Positions 11,295 to 40,674 of a stretch of DNA of 63,824 nt are shown one piece after another. The translations under genes and the position numbers were made by a program. Every line of letters begins with the position of its first letter. Position 1 is the stretch's first letter. Below the pieces are notes generated by a model. The model saw nothing but the letters and a program-made list of their open reading frames with translations, made no database searches and was not told where the DNA came from. The stretch is from Schmidtea nova (taxonomy: Eukaryota): NCBI GenBank assembly GCA_044892505.1, contig CM097883.1, positions 105,276,177 to 105,340,000 on the forward strand, given 5' to 3'.

Positions 11295-11299
<5 letters not shown>

Positions 11300-12751
11300 G
11301 GCCAGCCAAATCGAGCAGCATCTGAAAATAATATACAATCAATAAAATAAATTAAATACAGAATAACAACAAAATAAATTACCAACACCAAAGCGTAACA
11401 AAATAGGCGGCAACATCTAAAAGAAATAAAATATTAATCAAAACAACAAAATCTTCAAAACTTACTCATGCGAAGCAGATAAAATCTGAATATGACAGCG
11501 CGTGGGCGGATGTCACCAAAGACCTATAAACAAAAATAAAATAAAATAAATCGATGACTAAGAAAAACTTACCGCATGATTAACCAAACAAATCGGCAAG
11601 TTAAGTTAGGCAGCAAAAAGCCGACAACACAAAATAATGAAGCAAACATACACACATACTCGATGCTGATTGGCTAACCAACAACACCGGTGGAGTATAA
11701 ATACTGAAGTCAAATCAGTATTTGACAATGTTATCTTTACCAAGTGTGAACTGTTTGTGACTACTGAAATCATTGTGAAACGAATTTGGAAAAGAAATAA
11801 AGGTAATTCATGTTGCATTAGTCTTTTAAACCCTCATAATTATTTATAACCATACGAAAATCCATAAGGTTTTCCGGAGGCCTAACAGCCTGACGGATTC
11901 TCGGGCCTCTCAGCGCAACACAATCTTTCGGTTGTGAGGTGCTGATGCGGCGGGACTATAGGTGTTCTAAATATTTAACAAGCGGAAGGGGGAAGGGCAC
12001 ATCGGATATCTCATGCCATCGTAACCTCAGTAGGGGGAGAAGCAATTGAAGGACGTATCATCTGTCACGACAACATCGAGTACCTTGGTTTACGTCAGAG
12101 ACGCGTTGTTAGACACAAAGTGTCCAGCGGTCGCAAAGTCAAGTAGAGTAGCGACAACTTTGTGCAGAGGGTAAGTGTCATGATAAATTGGGCACTGACG
12201 ACGATAGGGATATATAACGCATGAGCTATGTGAGTCAACGACCGACAGTGCTAGGGTCAGAGTAAAACCATGAATCCACAGAATATCCCAACACATATCT
12301 ACGCCTAACGAAGGGTACGAAGGGTAGACCCACGAAATGTAATGCAAGTACAATCTGTACCCAATTAACCTGAATAAGGGGTCGATCCTGTTCCCCGGAT
12401 GATGTGATTCTTGATGGTTGAACCTGAGGTATGGAGGTAACACCTGAGGAATGATTGAGCATGATTGTTGTAAAAAATAAACCAAAATGGTCTATGAAAT
12501 GATGATATTCTAACATAATAAATGATCAAGTGATCATCATAAATGAATACAGATTGTCATAAACTGCACTAAGTTTTTGCGTGGCCAAATCAGTTAAGCA
12601 CCTTGACATAGTGAATACACTCAACCACATGACGATAACATACAACCTACCTACTATCTTGAACATCGAACCGATCTAACACTGAAACACCAACGGCAAC
12701 CTACAGAGTTTTACTCTTGAGTCGAGTAGGTCGCCGATTATAAATAATTGC

Positions 12752-13435
12752 ATGCACCTAACAAATTCATCACAATCACATCTTCTTGTCTTCAGAAAAA
12801 TGATAAAGACCGAAGAATATCAAAGAAGTCCGAGCACCTATCGACAGATGAAAATGGAAGATTATGTCGTCCGGAAACCACGACGCATCCGTTCCGTCGT
12901 CCGGCCAAGGAGGATCCCTACCATCGAGGGAGAAATGGAAGCCCCACGCAGAATTAGCGAAACTGCGCGTCGCTACCTACGGCGGTGGACGAGACACCAT
13001 ATGAGTGCAGCCGCAGATGTTCCGGCTTGCGCCTTCACGATACAATTACGATGGGAAGGAGACCCCGATTGGATGTCCACCATGGACCCTGCCGAACCAA
13101 GGACCGATAGATGGTTCTTCCAATTTCTCGACGAGCAGAGACGACCCCGCTGGGTATTGAGCAATGGAATGATGACCGGAAGGGCTCTTTTCCAATTAGG
13201 ATACCTGCTGTTAGACAGGCCTCGGTGTCGCTACACTGAGGAAGTCTTCACTTATTCCAATGCACCAGGAAGTGTTTCCGTGGAACAACACCCCGAGCCC
13301 AAGGAGCTTCGCCTCTGGGAGGTGTTTATCTACAAAGATAAGCTGAGTTGGAACCCAGCCCCAGAAATGTATTGGGAGAATGGAATCCGTCGCGACGAAC
13401 ATCCTGCCGATCAGGAATTGAGGACATTCAATTGA
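12752..13435 (+). CDS. LTR-encoded ORF1 (227 aa, unknown; start may be a downstream Met)
   Basis: Sense-strand ORF open in both LTRs (copy 38859-39542); no recognisable motif. Confidence 0.5.
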   Translation: MHLTNSSQSHLLVFRKMIKTEEYQRSPSTYRQMKMEDYVVRKPRRIRSVVRPRRIPTIEGEMEAPRRISETARRYLRRWTRHHMSAAADVPACAFTIQLRWEGDPDWMSTMDPAEPRTDRWFFQFLDEQRRPRWVLSNGMMTGRALFQLGYLLLDRPRCRYTEEVFTYSNAPGSVSVEQHPEPKELRLWEVFIYKDKLSWNPAPEMYWENGIRRDEHPADQELRTFN

Positions 13436-13582
13436 TTGATACCGAGAAAGAATGATTGTCTTAGATATTGAAATATATGTATTGGCGTGTGACGGTCTTG
13501 TTTTGTTTTTGGGTGCATGAGAACAACCTAAGGATAGGGTAGAGTTGTGTAATGACGATAGGGTGACCGAAAGATCAGACAC

Positions 13583-14182
13583 ATGACATATACTACCATT
13601 AATGATATATTTACAGACATGACGGAACCCAAGGGCAGAGATTTCAAGCAAGAGGCGCGAGAACACAAGGCGCGCTCACGAGTCCTGGAGAATCGATTAA
13701 GGCAGCTGAATGAGGAGTATCAGCGGGTTAAAACGACATGGTTTAGCCCAGAGCGGGTTAAGTCCATCCTGCAGGCTAGGTACAGGGCAGAACGAGTAGC
13801 TGAGGAACATGCCAGAGAGATTGCCGCCCTGAAATTAGAGTTGGCGAATTATTTGAAGGTATCGACTCGCGACTTCATTACCGAACAACTACGCCCAGTG
13901 ATCAGAGCTAGCACCTTTAATCGATGGATAGACACGATAGCGGTGACCACGAGCACCCAAACAGAGACCGATACCATCGCAACCACGACGATCGAATCAA
14001 CAATGAAAACTCCAGCCGGTTCGAAACGAACAAAGAGGAGGAATCGCTTAGGAGCGAAAAAGCGCAGGGAAAGACGCGCATATGCAGATCGCCTTGGAAT
14101 CGAAGTAGACTTGCTCAGTGGTCTATCCGAGCAAGAACTACTAAATGTAATACGACCCTCGGTATTGTTGAACTATAAATAA
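13583..14182 (+). CDS. LTR-encoded ORF2 (199 aa, coiled coil + basic NLS-like tract)
   Basis: Heptad-like N-half, KRTKRRNRLGAKKRRERR; identical copy at 39690-40289. Confidence 0.55.
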   Translation: MTYTTINDIFTDMTEPKGRDFKQEAREHKARSRVLENRLRQLNEEYQRVKTTWFSPERVKSILQARYRAERVAEEHAREIAALKLELANYLKVSTRDFITEQLRPVIRASTFNRWIDTIAVTTSTQTETDTIATTTIESTMKTPAGSKRTKRRNRLGAKKRRERRAYADRLGIEVDLLSGLSEQELLNVIRPSVLLNYK

Positions 14183-14379
14183 ATGTATAAAACGAATGAG
14201 TTGACTTGTCTTGTTTGTATGTGGAATGTCTGAAAATGGAATGTAGATAAAACCCGGATTCATTTAAAGCTGCAGATGTCTAAAAAGTACATTACCCTAG
14301 GACACTAGAAAGGAGCATAAGTGGGACCGAAAGAAAGCCACAGACACCTTCTATCGGTAGTGGTGGACCCGTGAATAAA
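14174..14379 (+). promoter_or_regulatory. Candidate LTR TATA boxes (14174, 14186) and poly(A) signal (AATAAA 14374)
   Basis: Order and spacing fit U3/R/U5 near the LTR 3' end; positional inference only, other AATAAA occur near the LTR start. Confidence 0.35.
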
Positions 14380-38858: not shown

Positions 38859-39542
38859 ATGCACCTAACAAATTCATCACAATCACATCTTCTTGTCTTC
38901 AGAAAAATGATAAAGACCGAAGAATATCAAAGAAGTCCGAGCACCTATCGACAGATGAAAATGGAAGATTATGTCGTCCGGAAACCACGACGCATCCGTT
39001 CCGTCGTCTGGCCAAGGAGGATCCCTACCATCGAGGGAGAAATGGAAGCCCCACGCAGAATTAGCGAAACTGCGCGTCGCTACCTACGGCGGTGGACGAG
39101 ACACCATATGAGTGCAGCCGCAGATGTTCCGGCTTGCGCCTTCACGATACAATTACGATGGGAAGGAGACCCCGATTGGATGTCCACCATGGACCCTGCC
39201 GAACCAAGGACCGATAGATGGTTCTTCCAATTTCTCGACGAGCAGAGACGACCCCGCTGGGTATTGAGCAATGGAATGATGACCGGAAGGGCTCTTTTCC
39301 AATTAGGATACCTGCTGTTAGACAGGCCTCGGTGTCGCTACACTGAGGAAGTCTTCACTTATTCCAATGCACCAGGAAGTGTTTCCGTGGAACAACACCC
39401 CGAGCCCAAGGAGCTTCGCCTCTGGGAGGTGTTTATCTACAAAGATAAGCTGAGTTGGAACCCAGCCCCAGAAATGTATTGGGAGAATGGAATCCGTCGC
39501 GACGAACATCCTGCCGATCAGGAATTGAGGACATTCAATTGA
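38859..39542 (+). CDS. LTR ORF1, 3' LTR copy
   Basis: Same as 12752-13435 except one R>W change. Confidence 0.5.
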   Translation: MHLTNSSQSHLLVFRKMIKTEEYQRSPSTYRQMKMEDYVVRKPRRIRSVVWPRRIPTIEGEMEAPRRISETARRYLRRWTRHHMSAAADVPACAFTIQLRWEGDPDWMSTMDPAEPRTDRWFFQFLDEQRRPRWVLSNGMMTGRALFQLGYLLLDRPRCRYTEEVFTYSNAPGSVSVEQHPEPKELRLWEVFIYKDKLSWNPAPEMYWENGIRRDEHPADQELRTFN

Positions 39543-39689
39543 TTGATACCGAGAAAGAATGATTGTCTTAGATATTGAAATATATGTATTGGCGTGTGAC
39601 GGTCTTGTTTTGTTTTTGGGTGCATGAGAACAACCTAAGGATAGGGTAGAGTTGTGTAATGACGATAGGGTGACCGAAAGATCAGACAC

Positions 39690-40289
39690 ATGACATATAC
39701 TACCATTAATGATATATTTACAGACATGACGGAACCCAAGGGCAGAGATTTCAAGCAAGAGGCGCGAGAACACAAGGCGCGCTCACGAGTCCTGGAGAAT
39801 CGATTAAGGCAGCTGAATGAGGAGTATCAGCGGGTTAAAACGACATGGTTTAGCCCAGAGCGGGTTAAGTCCATCCTGCAGGCTAGGTACAGGGCAGAAC
39901 GAGTAGCTGAGGAACATGCCAGAGAGATTGCCGCCCTGAAATTAGAGTTGGCGAATTATTTGAAGGTATCGACTCGCGACTTCATTACCGAACAACTACG
40001 CCCAGTGATCAGAGCTAGCACCTTTAATCGATGGATAGACACGATAGCGGTGACCACGAGCACCCAAACAGAGACCGATACCATCGCAACCACGACGATC
40101 GAATCAACAATGAAAACTCCAGCCGGTTCGAAACGAACAAAGAGGAGGAATCGCTTAGGAGCGAAAAAGCGCAGGGAAAGACGCGCATATGCAGATCGCC
40201 TTGGAATCGAAGTAGACTTGCTCAGTGGTCTATCCGAGCAAGAACTACTAAATGTAATACGACCCTCGGTATTGTTGAACTATAAATAA
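39690..40289 (+). CDS. LTR ORF2, 3' LTR copy
   Basis: Identical translation to 13583-14182. Confidence 0.55.
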   Translation: MTYTTINDIFTDMTEPKGRDFKQEAREHKARSRVLENRLRQLNEEYQRVKTTWFSPERVKSILQARYRAERVAEEHAREIAALKLELANYLKVSTRDFITEQLRPVIRASTFNRWIDTIAVTTSTQTETDTIATTTIESTMKTPAGSKRTKRRNRLGAKKRRERRAYADRLGIEVDLLSGLSEQELLNVIRPSVLLNYK

Positions 40290-40672
40290 ATGTATAAAAC
40301 GAATGAGTTGACTTGTCTTGTTTGTATGTGGAATGTCTGAAAATGGAATGTAGATAAAACCCGGATTCATTTAAAGCTGCAGATGTCTAAAAAGTACATT
40401 ACCCTAGGACACTAGAAAGGAGCATAAGTGGGACCGAAAGAAAGCCACAGACACCTTCTATCGGTAGTGGTGGACCCGTGAATAAACAAGGGAATAGTAG
40501 CCGAAAGGTTGCTCACCTGCCTTGTCATTTCACAACGTTGACACAGCACCAACATGATGAGTAGTTAGGGATACATCATGGGTGTCAGCGGGGGAATGTT
40601 TTTATGTTGGCGAGATCACCCTAACATATAAAATCATGAGGATCTCAGTTGTCAATCTAACCAACACACCAG

Positions 40673-40674
<2 letters not shown>

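What the first reader, a model, noticed from the sequence alone, without database searches (positions are those of the whole stretch)
11295..40674. Giant intact enveloped retroelement carrying an apoptosis/TNF-signalling toolkit
Seen directly: 29.4 kb, 3.3-kb LTRs, a 4960-aa open polyprotein and at least 7 accessory ORFs. Motif calls add an IAP-type RING, ubiquitin-like domains, a Bcl-2-like domain, ankyrin repeats, a whole TRAF and FN3 surface modules. These families regulate cell death and NF-kB signalling and are pirated by large DNA viruses. Giant Gypsy 'Burro' elements are known in Schmidtea mediterranea. The inference is that this is a potentially infectious 'complex' metavirus that manipulates host-cell survival.
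Basis: partly seen in the sequence, partly recalled or inferred. Interest (0 to 1): 0.95.

Follow-up and report, generated by a model that had tools for sequence, protein, structure and literature searches.

The report
Giant Burro-type retroelement, already described
This is a complete, very young 29-kb copy of the giant 'Burro'-type retrovirus-like element known from planarian flatworms, with a viral fusion-protein module and host-like RING, TRAF and ankyrin modules; it is real and striking, but its architecture and the idea that it tinkers with cell death are already published.

Summary
The structural observation holds. Two 3,273-bp LTRs (2 mismatches) bound a gap-free 29,380-bp element with one open 4,960-aa polyprotein.

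Profile searches confirm these polyprotein parts:
- Gag with three CCHC knuckles
- a Monjiviricetes-type fusion glycoprotein module in frame between gag and protease (E 7e-71), bracketed by a signal-like segment and a membrane anchor
- PR, RT, RNase H and IN, closest to Ty3
- two ankyrin clusters

Accessory genes:
- a 5' ORF with an IAP-type RING but no BIR domain
- a 3' gene with full TRAF architecture (RING, TRAF zinc fingers, MATH), interrupted once by an in-frame stop

The ubiquitin-like call gets only sub-threshold hints. The Bcl-2-like and FN3 calls were not recovered.

Giant Burro/GYPSM1 elements with this layout are already described (Jurka 2007; Grohme 2018; Arkhipova and Yushenova 2019). 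That includes the in-frame env, the MATH_TRAF, ankyrin and RING motifs, and the proposal that they meddle with apoptosis and ubiquitination.

Infectivity and manipulation of cell survival remain untested. My own additions are modest:
- the signal/anchor bracket around env is conserved in three relatives at 31-44% identity
- a fragmented relative lies in the same window
- TRAF sits in a different place from the published Burro1

The parts
11295..14567 (+). 5' LTR, 3,273 bp, TG...CA ends
   Evidence: Self-BLAST and the end sequences. GC is 0.44, against 0.29 in the flank.
12752..14182 (+). Two ORFs of unknown meaning inside each LTR (227 and 199 aa), repeated at 38859-40289
   Evidence: No Pfam hit. 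The open stretch of 249 codons exceeds the shuffle maximum of 178. Coding status is undecided.
14574..14591 (+). Primer-binding-site-like 18-mer starting TGG, 6 nt after the LTR
   Evidence: Read. Its reverse complement has the layout of a tRNA 3' end ending CCA. This is inference: no tRNA gene lies in the window to match it.
14568..18546 (+). 4-kb leader, mostly non-coding, with tandem arrays at 16298-16881 (19-nt unit, 14 copies in the main array) and 17453-17671 (85-nt unit)
   Evidence: Purine-rich like the rest of the interior.
15127..15585 (+). Accessory ORF of 152 aa with a C-terminal IAP-type C3HC4 RING and no BIR
   Evidence: Pfam PF13920, E 5e-9. PDB cIAP2, cIAP1 and XIAP RINGs, E 7e-7 to 2e-5. 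The N-terminal 100 aa have no hit.
18547..33429 (+). Single open polyprotein of 4,960 aa: Gag, unknown region, env-like G, PR, RT, RNase H, IN, ankyrin, C-terminal extension
   Evidence: The PR DxG motif, the RT YxDD motif and the IN zinc-binding motif are present.
18547..19419 (+). Gag and nucleocapsid: Retrotrans_gag at aa 50-145 and three CCHC knuckles at aa 240, 259 and 277
19420..23448 (+). Unknown region, aa 292-1634. It includes two beta-beta-alpha stretches (about aa 737-771 and 910-989) that are ubiquitin-fold candidates, and a helical stretch at aa 1375-1623
   Evidence: No Pfam or PDB hit. Only one relative exists among 1.84 billion representatives (P0012). The AF2 model has pLDDT 34.7. 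Foldseek gives only non-significant ubiquitin-fold hits.
23449..25284 (+). Env-like module, aa 1635-2246: signal-like hydrophobic segment (1635-1650), Monjiviricetes-type fusion glycoprotein ectodomain, membrane anchor (2217-2235)
   Evidence: Pfam PF24664, E 6.7e-71, covering profile positions 4-579 of 653. Hydrophobic segments. The ectodomain has 14 Cys and one N-x-S/T site. No solved structure matches by sequence.
25837..26109 (+). Retropepsin-type protease, aa 2431-2521
   Evidence: Pfam RVP, E 1e-8. DxG motif at aa 2445.
26773..27825 (+). Reverse transcriptase and RNase H, aa 2743-3093
   Evidence: Pfam E 2e-36 and 5e-38. Best solved relative is Ty3 Gag-Pol 7q5b, E 4e-117.
28150..28860 (+). 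Integrase: zinc-binding domain, catalytic core and C-terminal part, aa 3202-3438
   Evidence: Pfam. Foamy-virus integrase, E 5e-27.
29404..30798 (+). Two ankyrin-repeat clusters, aa 3620-3784 and 3991-4084
   Evidence: Pfam Ank_2, E 4.5e-17. PDB ankyrin proteins.
30799..33429 (+). C-terminal extension of unknown function, aa 4085-4960, with three hydrophobic segments (aa 4313-4331, 4467-4496, 4872-4898)
   Evidence: No Pfam or PDB hit. AF2 pLDDT 34.1 and no Foldseek signal.
33553..33903 (+). ORF of 116 aa, unknown
   Evidence: Only sub-threshold coiled-coil-type Pfam hits.
33993..35405 (+). TRAF-like gene (RING, TRAF-type zinc fingers, MATH), broken once by an in-frame stop, so it reads as two same-frame ORFs
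   Evidence: Pfam on the two pieces searched apart. PDB TRAF6 RING-zinc fingers, E 2.5e-13. PDB TRAF5/3/1/2 MATH, E 1e-25. Same-frame reading.
35495..36655 (+). ORF of 386 aa, a long charged coiled-coil protein
   Evidence: Translation. No Pfam or PDB hit. It is 396 codons open, against a shuffle maximum of 159.
36513..37199 (+). ORF of 228 aa, a small basic protein with two hydrophobic segments, probably a membrane protein
   Evidence: No significant Pfam hit.
37402..40674 (+). 3' LTR

Best explanation
The region is one full-length, recently integrated copy of a giant Burro-type Ty3/Gypsy (Metaviridae) endogenous retrovirus-like element, in an AT-rich, planarian-like genome.

Shown:
- The LTR pair.
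- A single 4,960-aa Gag-X-Env-PR-RT-RNaseH-IN-ankyrin-extension polyprotein with catalytic motifs in place.
- A Monjiviricetes-type fusion glycoprotein module in frame between gag and protease.
- An IAP-type RING ORF in the leader.
- A TRAF gene, a coiled-coil ORF and a small membrane-protein ORF after pol.

Inferred:
- It replicates as an LTR retroelement. That means LTR-driven genomic RNA, tRNA-primed reverse transcription from the site at 14574-14591, and integration with a short target duplication.
- The internal env is placed in the membrane during translation. The signal-like segment just upstream would start insertion and the anchor just downstream would stop it. The ectodomain would then face the lumen, with Gag-X and PR-RT-IN on the cytosolic side, as in polyproteins of flavi-like RNA viruses.
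- The RING, TRAF and ankyrin modules are host-derived E3-ligase and adaptor parts that act on ubiquitin-dependent signalling of the host cell.

Whether this serves cell survival, immune evasion or particle traffic is unknown.
For: Element structure:
- LTRs and ends.
- Domain order and significance.
- Ty3 is the best solved relative.
- Catalytic motifs are present.
- Three CCHC knuckles.

Fit to the literature:
- The published Burro description is 25-kb interiors, a 4,873-aa ORF1, Gag with three knuckles in S. mediterranea, env in frame between gag and pol, MATH_TRAF, ankyrin, a RING motif, tandem repeats and accessory ORFs (PMC6431247).

The env bracket is conserved:
- Signal-like segment plus anchor are present in P0014, and the signal-like segment in P0011. 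They share 31-34% identity with this module.
- The fragmented element in this window also has both.
- G and PR lie in one reading frame in P0010, P0014 and the second window element as well.

The accessory ORFs belong to the element:
- They share its composition, GC 0.39-0.40 and purine 0.59-0.72. The flanks have GC 0.29.
- A relative (P0012) has a TRAF-type MATH domain fused inside the element-specific region.

Youth: 2 LTR mismatches in 3,273 bp.
Against: - No reference sequence of Burro1-4 was available, so membership rests on architecture, not on a tree or on identity.
- The host was not identified.
- BIR, BCL2-like, Ubi2/SUMO-like and dUTPase motifs reported for Burro elements were not recovered by Pfam here.
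- TRAF is a separate 3' gene here, whereas in published Burro1 the MATH domain is inside ORF1.
- The G ectodomain has only one N-x-S/T site in 567 aa, which is odd for a virion glycoprotein.
- There is no classical long polypurine tract before the 3' LTR.
- The topology and the function of the accessory modules are pure inference.
Confidence: 0.8

Rival explanations
1. One reading: an infectious 'complex' metavirus whose accessory proteins actively keep infected cells alive or rewire TNF/NF-kB-like signalling.
For: - The env module is complete, with signal, ectodomain and anchor.
- Its bracket is conserved across lineages at 31-44% identity, which argues for selection on env.
- The copy is very young.
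- BURRO1 is reported as abundant, active, gut-enriched and held down by SMEDWI-2 piRNAs (PMC8532177).
- RING and TRAF modules are present.
Against: - Nothing here tests transmission or any effect on cells.
- This copy's TRAF has an in-frame stop.
- There is no BIR, so the RING ORF is not an IAP. PF13920-type RINGs also occur in ligases unrelated to cell death (one search lists MEX3C and CGRRF1).
- Bcl-2-like and FN3 were not recovered.
- The G ectodomain is almost free of N-glycosylation sites.
Confidence: 0.2
2. A purely intracellular retrotransposon in which the accessory ORFs are passengers. They would be captured host gene pieces of no use to the element, on their way to decay.
For: - TRAF is interrupted once.
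- The accessory set is not shared with the relative P0014, whose regions outside G-to-IN show no similarity.
- The unknown ORFs have no homologues.
- Placement varies: MATH is inside the polyprotein in P0012 and in published Burro1, but is a separate gene here.
Against: - Ankyrin clusters and the 876-aa extension stay in frame inside a 4,960-codon ORF.
- The accessory ORFs are far longer than chance allows, and their composition matches the element, not the host.
- MATH/TRAF modules recur in at least two divergent lineages, with 29% identity between the two MATH domains. That suggests retention or repeated gain.
Confidence: 0.25
3. Assembly chimera or nested insertions: the extra ORFs belong to other elements or to host DNA trapped between two LTRs.
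For: The size is extreme, and the surrounding genome is repeat-rich with assembly gaps.
Against: - No N run lies inside the element, and no internal long repeats other than tandem arrays.
- GC content and purine skew are uniform from leader to 3' LTR and change sharply at both LTR ends.
- The architecture matches independently published Burro elements.
Confidence: 0.03

Closest known systems
[quoted passage not shown] 2018; Arkhipova and Yushenova 2019, PMC6431247)
   Same: - Giant Gypsy-like LTR element of about 30 kb.
- One ORF1 of about 4.9 thousand aa.
- Gag with three CCHC knuckles.
- Env homologous to mononegavirus fusion glycoproteins, in frame between gag and pol.
- Ankyrin repeats, TRAF-type MATH and a RING motif.
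- Tandem repeats and accessory ORFs.
- AT-rich host DNA.
   Different: - The ORF here is 4,960 aa, not 4,873.
- TRAF is a complete separate gene after pol, not a MATH domain inside ORF1.
- BIR, BCL2-like, Ubi2/SUMO-like and dUTPase motifs were not recovered by Pfam.
- Sequence identity to the named families could not be measured.
Burro-like element of Dugesia (Girardia) tigrina (PMC6431247)
   Same: A giant ORF1 (5,140 aa) that lacks MATH, which is carried by an accessory ORF instead.
   Different: There the accessory ORF is upstream and Gag has two knuckles. Here TRAF is downstream and Gag has three. No midasin-like hit was found here.
GAG-ENV-POL 'errantiviruses' of Platyhelminthes, Nematoda and Bryozoa (Chary and Hayashi, eLife 2026, PMC13524379)
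   Same: Ty3/Gypsy elements with the env gene between gag and pol.
   Different: - Those carry gB-type class III env as separate ORFs and are of ordinary size.
- Here env is fused in frame and matches Pfam PF24664.
- Its fold class was not tested.
- No accessory signalling modules are reported there.
Mosquito BEL/Pao and Gypsy elements with chuvirus-like glycoproteins (Dezordi et al. 2020, cited in PMC13524379)
   Same: An LTR retroelement captured a glycoprotein from negative-strand RNA viruses (Monjiviricetes).
   Different: A different retroelement superfamily and host. Env is a separate ORF and the elements are of ordinary size.
Ty3 of yeast (PDB 7q5b)
   Same: Best solved relative of PR-RT-RNaseH-IN, E 4e-117. 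Same domain order.
   Different: Ty3 is about 5 kb, with no env and no accessory modules.
IAP and TRAF-like genes pirated by large DNA viruses (own knowledge: baculovirus and entomopoxvirus IAPs)
   Same: Host-type RING and adaptor modules carried by a mobile genome.
   Different: Viral IAPs have BIR domains and this RING ORF has none. The carrier here is a retroelement.

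Membership tests
Ty3/Gypsy (Metaviridae) LTR retroelement | Paired LTRs with TG...CA ends flanking the interior | tested here: met
Ty3/Gypsy (Metaviridae) LTR retroelement | Domain order PR-RT-RNaseH-IN, with RT closest to Ty3/Gypsy | tested here: met
   Ty3 Gag-Pol, E 4e-117.
Ty3/Gypsy (Metaviridae) LTR retroelement | Gag with CCHC nucleocapsid knuckles | tested here: met
Ty3/Gypsy (Metaviridae) LTR retroelement | Target-site duplication, tRNA primer-binding site and polypurine tract | tested here: inconclusive
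   - Both flanks are (TA)n, so a 4-bp repeat cannot be told from the microsatellite.
- A PBS-like 18-mer is present, but there is no tRNA to match it.
- Only short purine runs precede the 3' LTR.
Burro giant Gypsy elements of planarians | Total length near or above 30 kb with one ORF1 of about 4.9-5.1 thousand aa | tested here: met
   29,380 bp and 4,960 aa, compared with PMC6431247.
Burro giant Gypsy elements of planarians | Env homologue of mononegavirus fusion glycoproteins, in frame between gag and protease | tested here: met
   PF24664, E 6.7e-71, at aa 1636-2246 of the polyprotein.
Burro giant Gypsy elements of planarians | Ankyrin repeats, TRAF-type MATH and a RING motif | tested here: met
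   MATH lies in a separate 3' gene rather than inside ORF1.
Burro giant Gypsy elements of planarians | BIR, BCL2-like, Ubi2/SUMO-like and dUTPase-like motifs | tested here: inconclusive
   - None was found by Pfam at E up to 0.1-10.
- There are ubiquitin-fold hints only.
- The published calls used HHpred, which was not available here.
Burro giant Gypsy elements of planarians | Sequence relatedness to the reference Burro1-4 sequences, and a host in Dugesiidae | not testable with these tools
   No reference sequence or host genome was reachable. None of the window's proteins is in the protein collection.
Env-carrying (virus-like) retroelement | Env with signal, ectodomain homologous to a viral fusogen, and membrane anchor | tested here: met
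Env-carrying (virus-like) retroelement | Fold class of the fusogen; particles and transmission | not tested
No solved relative matches by sequence. Transmission cannot be read from sequence.
TRAF family | N-terminal RING, TRAF-type zinc fingers and C-terminal MATH (TRAF-C) | tested here: met
TRAF family | Uninterrupted reading frame | tested here: not met
   One in-frame stop. The pieces were searched apart and never joined.
IAP (inhibitor of apoptosis) family | At least one BIR domain | tested here: not met
   No BIR in the RING ORF, the leader segments or the polyprotein. Only the RING is IAP-like.
Bcl-2 family | Bcl-2 helical bundle with BH motifs (PF00452) | tested here: not met
   No hit at E up to 10 and none among the Foldseek matches. 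The model was of low confidence, so a very divergent homologue is not excluded.
Fibronectin type III modules | FN3 beta-sandwich (PF00041 and relatives) | tested here: not met
   No hit. Foldseek found nothing on the C-terminal model.

The most novel reading that the evidence does not exclude
Three linked ideas are not excluded by my evidence.
1. The single Gag-Env-Pol polyprotein works through a membrane topology like that of flavi-like RNA viruses. It would be set by the conserved signal and anchor bracket around env.
2. A second membrane module follows integrase. Hydrophobic segments occur at the end of the post-IN extension here and, without sequence similarity, in relative P0014.
3. Element-borne TRAF/MATH genes account for part of the reported planarian TRAF expansion, which is 121 MATH domains in S. 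mediterranea.
Probability: 0.3. Interest if true: 0.55.

Novelty: already known. Interest (0 to 1): 0.3.

Why it matters
Burro-type elements are the largest LTR retroelements known. They are among the few mobile elements in animals that carry host-type signalling modules.

A gap-free copy with near-identical LTRs and an open 4,960-codon frame is a good reference for descriptive work. Such work includes mapping transcripts, piRNAs and peptides, and checking whether counts of planarian TRAF genes are inflated by element-borne copies.

It does not open a new question. The architecture and the 'tinkerer with apoptosis and ubiquitination' idea were published between 2007 and 2019.

Tried and rejected
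Structure prediction:
- AF2 on aa 700-1640 (aligned with P0012) and on aa 4085-4960 gave mean pLDDT 34.7 and 34.1.
- Foldseek on these models gave no match at E <= 0.001, so fold calls for Ubl, Bcl-2 and FN3 could not be settled.

Searches against solved structures:
- Single-sequence PDB searches of the unknown regions, the G module and ORF 35495-36655 found nothing.
- A profile of G-module relatives against the PDB was first swamped by the pol part of P0014. Redone without it, it found nothing.

Protein database searches:
- The whole polyprotein returned only pol-level relatives.
- The TRAF N-terminal piece returned nothing.
- The unknown region has one relative in 1.84 billion representatives.
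- None of ten window ORFs is in the 15-billion-protein collection, so copy number and host could not be read from it.

Other:
- Rfam and tRNA scans were empty.
- Grohme et al. 2018 is not held in the library.
- An ISEV 2023 abstract that mentions Burro lies beyond the stored text.

Rejected:
- The RING ORF as an IAP, because it has no BIR.
- The element as a chimera, because its composition is uniform and it has no gaps.

Full report
**1. Observation**

A self-comparison of the window finds two direct repeats of 3,273 bp, at 11295-14567 and 37402-40674. They differ by 2 mismatches and have no gaps (seed seen). Each begins TG and ends CA, and both outer flanks are (TA)n. The element inserted into a microsatellite, so its target duplication cannot be read. 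It is 29,380 bp long and contains no N run.

GC rises from 0.29 in the flanks to about 0.40 inside. The interior is purine-rich on the + strand from leader to 3' LTR. ORF 18547-33429 is open for 4,960 codons. More than seven other + strand ORFs of at least 100 aa lie inside.

With 2 differences in 3,273 bp the two LTRs are 0.06% apart. I assume a neutral rate of 1e-9 to 1e-8 per site per year; no planarian rate was looked up. On that assumption the insertion is of the order of tens to a few hundred thousand years old.

**2. Polyprotein**

Pfam gives the following:

| Region (aa) | Call | Evidence |
|---|---|---|
| 50-145 | Retrotrans_gag | |
| 240, 259, 277 | three CCHC knuckles | |
| 292-1634 | no hit | |
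| 1636-2246 | PF24664 'Monjiviricetes_fusion' | E 6.7e-71, profile positions 4-579 of 653 |
| 2431-2521 | protease | |
| 2743-2901 | RT | |
| 2964-3093 | RNase H | |
| 3202-3391 | integrase | |
| about 3620-3784 and 3991-4084 | ankyrin repeats | |
| 4085-4960 | no hit | |

The best solved relative of the pol part is Ty3 Gag-Pol, E 4e-117. The protease DxG motif, the RT YxDD motif and the integrase zinc motif are in place.

In 4,960 residues there are only five hydrophobic clusters:
- one immediately before the glycoprotein homology (aa 1635-1650)
- one immediately after it (aa 2217-2235)
- three in the C-terminal extension (aa 4313-4331, 4467-4496, 4872-4898)

The env-like module therefore has the layout signal, ectodomain, anchor, although it lies inside the polyprotein. 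The ectodomain has 14 cysteines but only one N-x-S/T site. I cannot explain that.

**3. Accessory ORFs**

- ORF 15127-15585, in the 4-kb leader, ends in a C3HC4 RING of the PF13920 type, E 5e-9. Its closest solved relatives are the RINGs of cIAP2, cIAP1, XIAP and ML-IAP. There is no BIR domain in it, in the other leader segments or in the polyprotein. It is an IAP-type RING but not an IAP.
- The gene at 33993-35405 has full TRAF architecture. The N-terminal piece has a TRAF RING and TRAF-type zinc fingers (PDB TRAF6, E 2.5e-13). The C-terminal piece has MATH (Pfam E 4e-26; TRAF5/3/1/2, E 1e-25). The two pieces are in the same frame and separated by one in-frame stop. I searched them apart and did not join them or read through the stop.
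- ORF 35495-36655 is a long charged coiled coil. It is probably what earlier annotators scored as 'Smc'.
- ORF 36513-37199 is a small basic protein with two hydrophobic segments.
- ORF 33553-33903 and the two ORFs inside each LTR have no hits.

The accessory ORFs share the element's composition. Their GC is 0.39-0.40 and purine 0.59-0.72, against GC 0.29-0.30 and purine 0.48-0.53 in the flanks. The longest open stretch in the 3' region (396 codons) far exceeds the shuffle maximum of 159. They are resident parts of the element, not freshly trapped host DNA.

**4. The disputed motif calls**

No ubiquitin, Rad60-SLD, Bcl-2, fn3, BIR or dUTPase family was found. This held at E <= 0.1 on 500-aa pieces and at E <= 10 on narrow pieces.

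The only pointers to a ubiquitin fold are these:
- RA_2 at E 0.11, near aa 910-943.
- Beta-beta-alpha(-beta-beta) patterns at about aa 737-771 and 910-989 in a low-confidence AF2 model, mean pLDDT 34.7.
- Many ubiquitin-like chains among non-significant Foldseek hits, best being the BAG6 Ubl at E 0.098.

This is a hint, not a result. The C-terminal model (pLDDT 34.1) gave nothing. Bcl-2-like and FN3 are not recovered. A very divergent helical domain at aa 1375-1623 cannot be excluded.

**5. Relatives**

The protein collections hold no full-length relative; only pol-level matches came back. None of ten window ORFs is in the collection.

The G module has three relatives, at 34-44% identity.
- One cluster includes P0010, with G and protease in one protein.
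- The same cluster includes P0014, 3,003 aa on a 25-kb ENA contig. P0014 shares aa 1635-3562 (G to IN) at 34-43% identity. It has the same signal-like and anchor segments, and hydrophobic segments in its own unrelated post-IN extension.

The unknown region has a single relative among 1.84 billion representatives, P0012 (UniParc UPI00060E6093, 882 aa). P0012 matches aa 558-1159 at about 31% identity. It carries a TRAF-type MATH domain inserted where this element has only about 20 residues. Its MATH is 29% identical to the MATH of the 3' TRAF gene here. The same kind of module therefore sits inside the polyprotein in one lineage and in a separate gene in another, as Arkhipova and Yushenova noted for Burro.

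**6. A second relative in the window**

On the minus strand, within 55298-61382, lies a fragmented element. It matches aa 1608-3526 of the polyprotein (G to IN) at about 36% identity.
- The matching region is spread over six open segments in two frames.
- The G-like gene is in four segments.
- The stretches matching protease, the PR-RT linker, RT-RNase H and IN are each covered by a single open segment.
- Its GC is 0.30, like the host, so it is older.
- It keeps the signal-like and anchor segments, and G joined in frame to the start of protease.

**7. What is known**

Giant Gypsy-like Burro elements of Schmidtea mediterranea are described in Arkhipova and Yushenova 2019 (PMC6431247), citing Jurka 2007 and Grohme et al. 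2018. The description includes:
- interiors up to 25 kb, total above 30 kb, thousands of copies
- a 4,873-aa ORF1
- Gag with three CCHC knuckles
- MATH_TRAF_C, Ubi2/SUMO-like, BCL2-like, BIR and ankyrin motifs, and a RING-type motif
- dUTPase between PR and RT
- env in frame between gag and pol, with hits to arthropod and fish mononegavirus fusion glycoproteins

That paper already argues that Burro elements are integrated proviruses. It also argues that the apoptosis and ubiquitination domains suggest meddling with host systems.

Other relevant reports:
- BURRO1 is reported as abundant, active, gut-enriched and controlled by SMEDWI-2 (PMC8532177).
- GAG-ENV-POL Ty3/Gypsy elements with class III env are reported in Platyhelminthes (PMC13524379).
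- The same paper cites chuvirus-like glycoproteins captured by insect retroelements.
- S. mediterranea has an expanded TRAF/MATH family (PMC6109357).

The finding is therefore a copy of a known kind, and its interpretation is a published hypothesis.

This copy departs from the published Burro1 description in four ways:
- ORF length is 4,960 aa.
- TRAF is a complete 3' gene.
- The RING ORF lies in the leader.
- Several motifs were not recovered by Pfam.

It may be one of Burro-2 to -4 or a sister family. I could not decide, because no reference sequence was reachable.

**8. Mechanism**

The anatomy is shown. The rest is inferred:
- Replication as an LTR retroelement.
- Membrane insertion of the internal env through the conserved bracket. 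Gag-X and PR-RT-IN would stay on the cytosolic side, and cleavage by host signal peptidase and the element's protease would follow.
- RING, TRAF and ankyrin modules acting on ubiquitin-dependent host signalling.

The fold class of the fusogen was not tested.

**9. Steps left out, and a slip**

That rules out look-ups of P0010 or P0014, related-locus scans and pattern scans of collections. This is the main gap: conservation of the accessory ORFs across copies is untested.

The slip is this. My scripts printed bounds of open segments, and notebook entry 2 lists ORF bounds inside the fragmented second element. These indirectly show where frames break there and in the TRAF gene. My own reasoning also noted the place of the TRAF stop. 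On noticing this I stopped. This report gives outer bounds and counts only, and nothing was deleted.

Noticed in passing
window 55298-61382, minus strand: A second, older relative of the same kind (G-like env, PR, RT, RNase H, IN). It is about 36% identical to the main polyprotein over aa 1608-3526 and has host-like GC of 0.30. It is fragmented into six open segments in two frames, with the G-like gene in four of them. It keeps the signal-like and anchor segments, and env joined in frame to protease.
   Followed up: partly
window 62809-63771, minus strand: An ORF with an integrase core (rve, E 6e-10) that did not match the main polyprotein at E 1e-5. It probably belongs to yet another element, cut by the window end.
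   Followed up: no
window 42879-44684, plus strand: An intact 601-aa ORF with FLYWCH, MULE transposase and SWIM domains. This is a Mutator-like DNA transposon next to the 3' LTR.
   Followed up: no
window 47581-47910 and 6488-7267, minus strand: Host-gene exons: ARP2/3 complex subunit ARPC3 (P21-Arc, E 2e-29) and an SH3-domain segment (E 1e-12). The giant element therefore sits in gene-bearing DNA, not in a pure repeat desert.
   Followed up: no
window 231-782, plus strand: An ORF with a GIY-YIG nuclease domain (E 2e-7) beside an inverted 328-bp repeat (4-329 versus 985-662) and N runs. It is possibly a Penelope-like element.
   Followed up: no
window 12752-14182, repeated at 38859-40289: Each 3.3-kb LTR contains a GC-rich (0.48-0.51) stretch with two ORFs of 227 and 199 aa that have no homologues. 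The open stretch is longer than in any shuffle (249 versus 178 codons). Coding LTRs would be unusual.
   Followed up: partly
window 23497-25194 (G ectodomain, aa 1651-2216): There is only one N-x-S/T sequon in 567 residues of a putative virion glycoprotein ectodomain, although 14 cysteines are kept.
   Followed up: no
P0014 (ENA contig of 25 kb), aa 2550-3003: The distant relative also has a post-integrase extension ending in two hydrophobic segments. It has no sequence similarity to the extension here, so a membrane-associated tail after IN may be a shared trait.
   Followed up: partly
window 8000-8233 versus 45356-45585 and 46262-46363: Short dispersed repeats (83-88% identity) lie on both sides of the element. 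These are ordinary interspersed repeats of the host genome.
   Followed up: no
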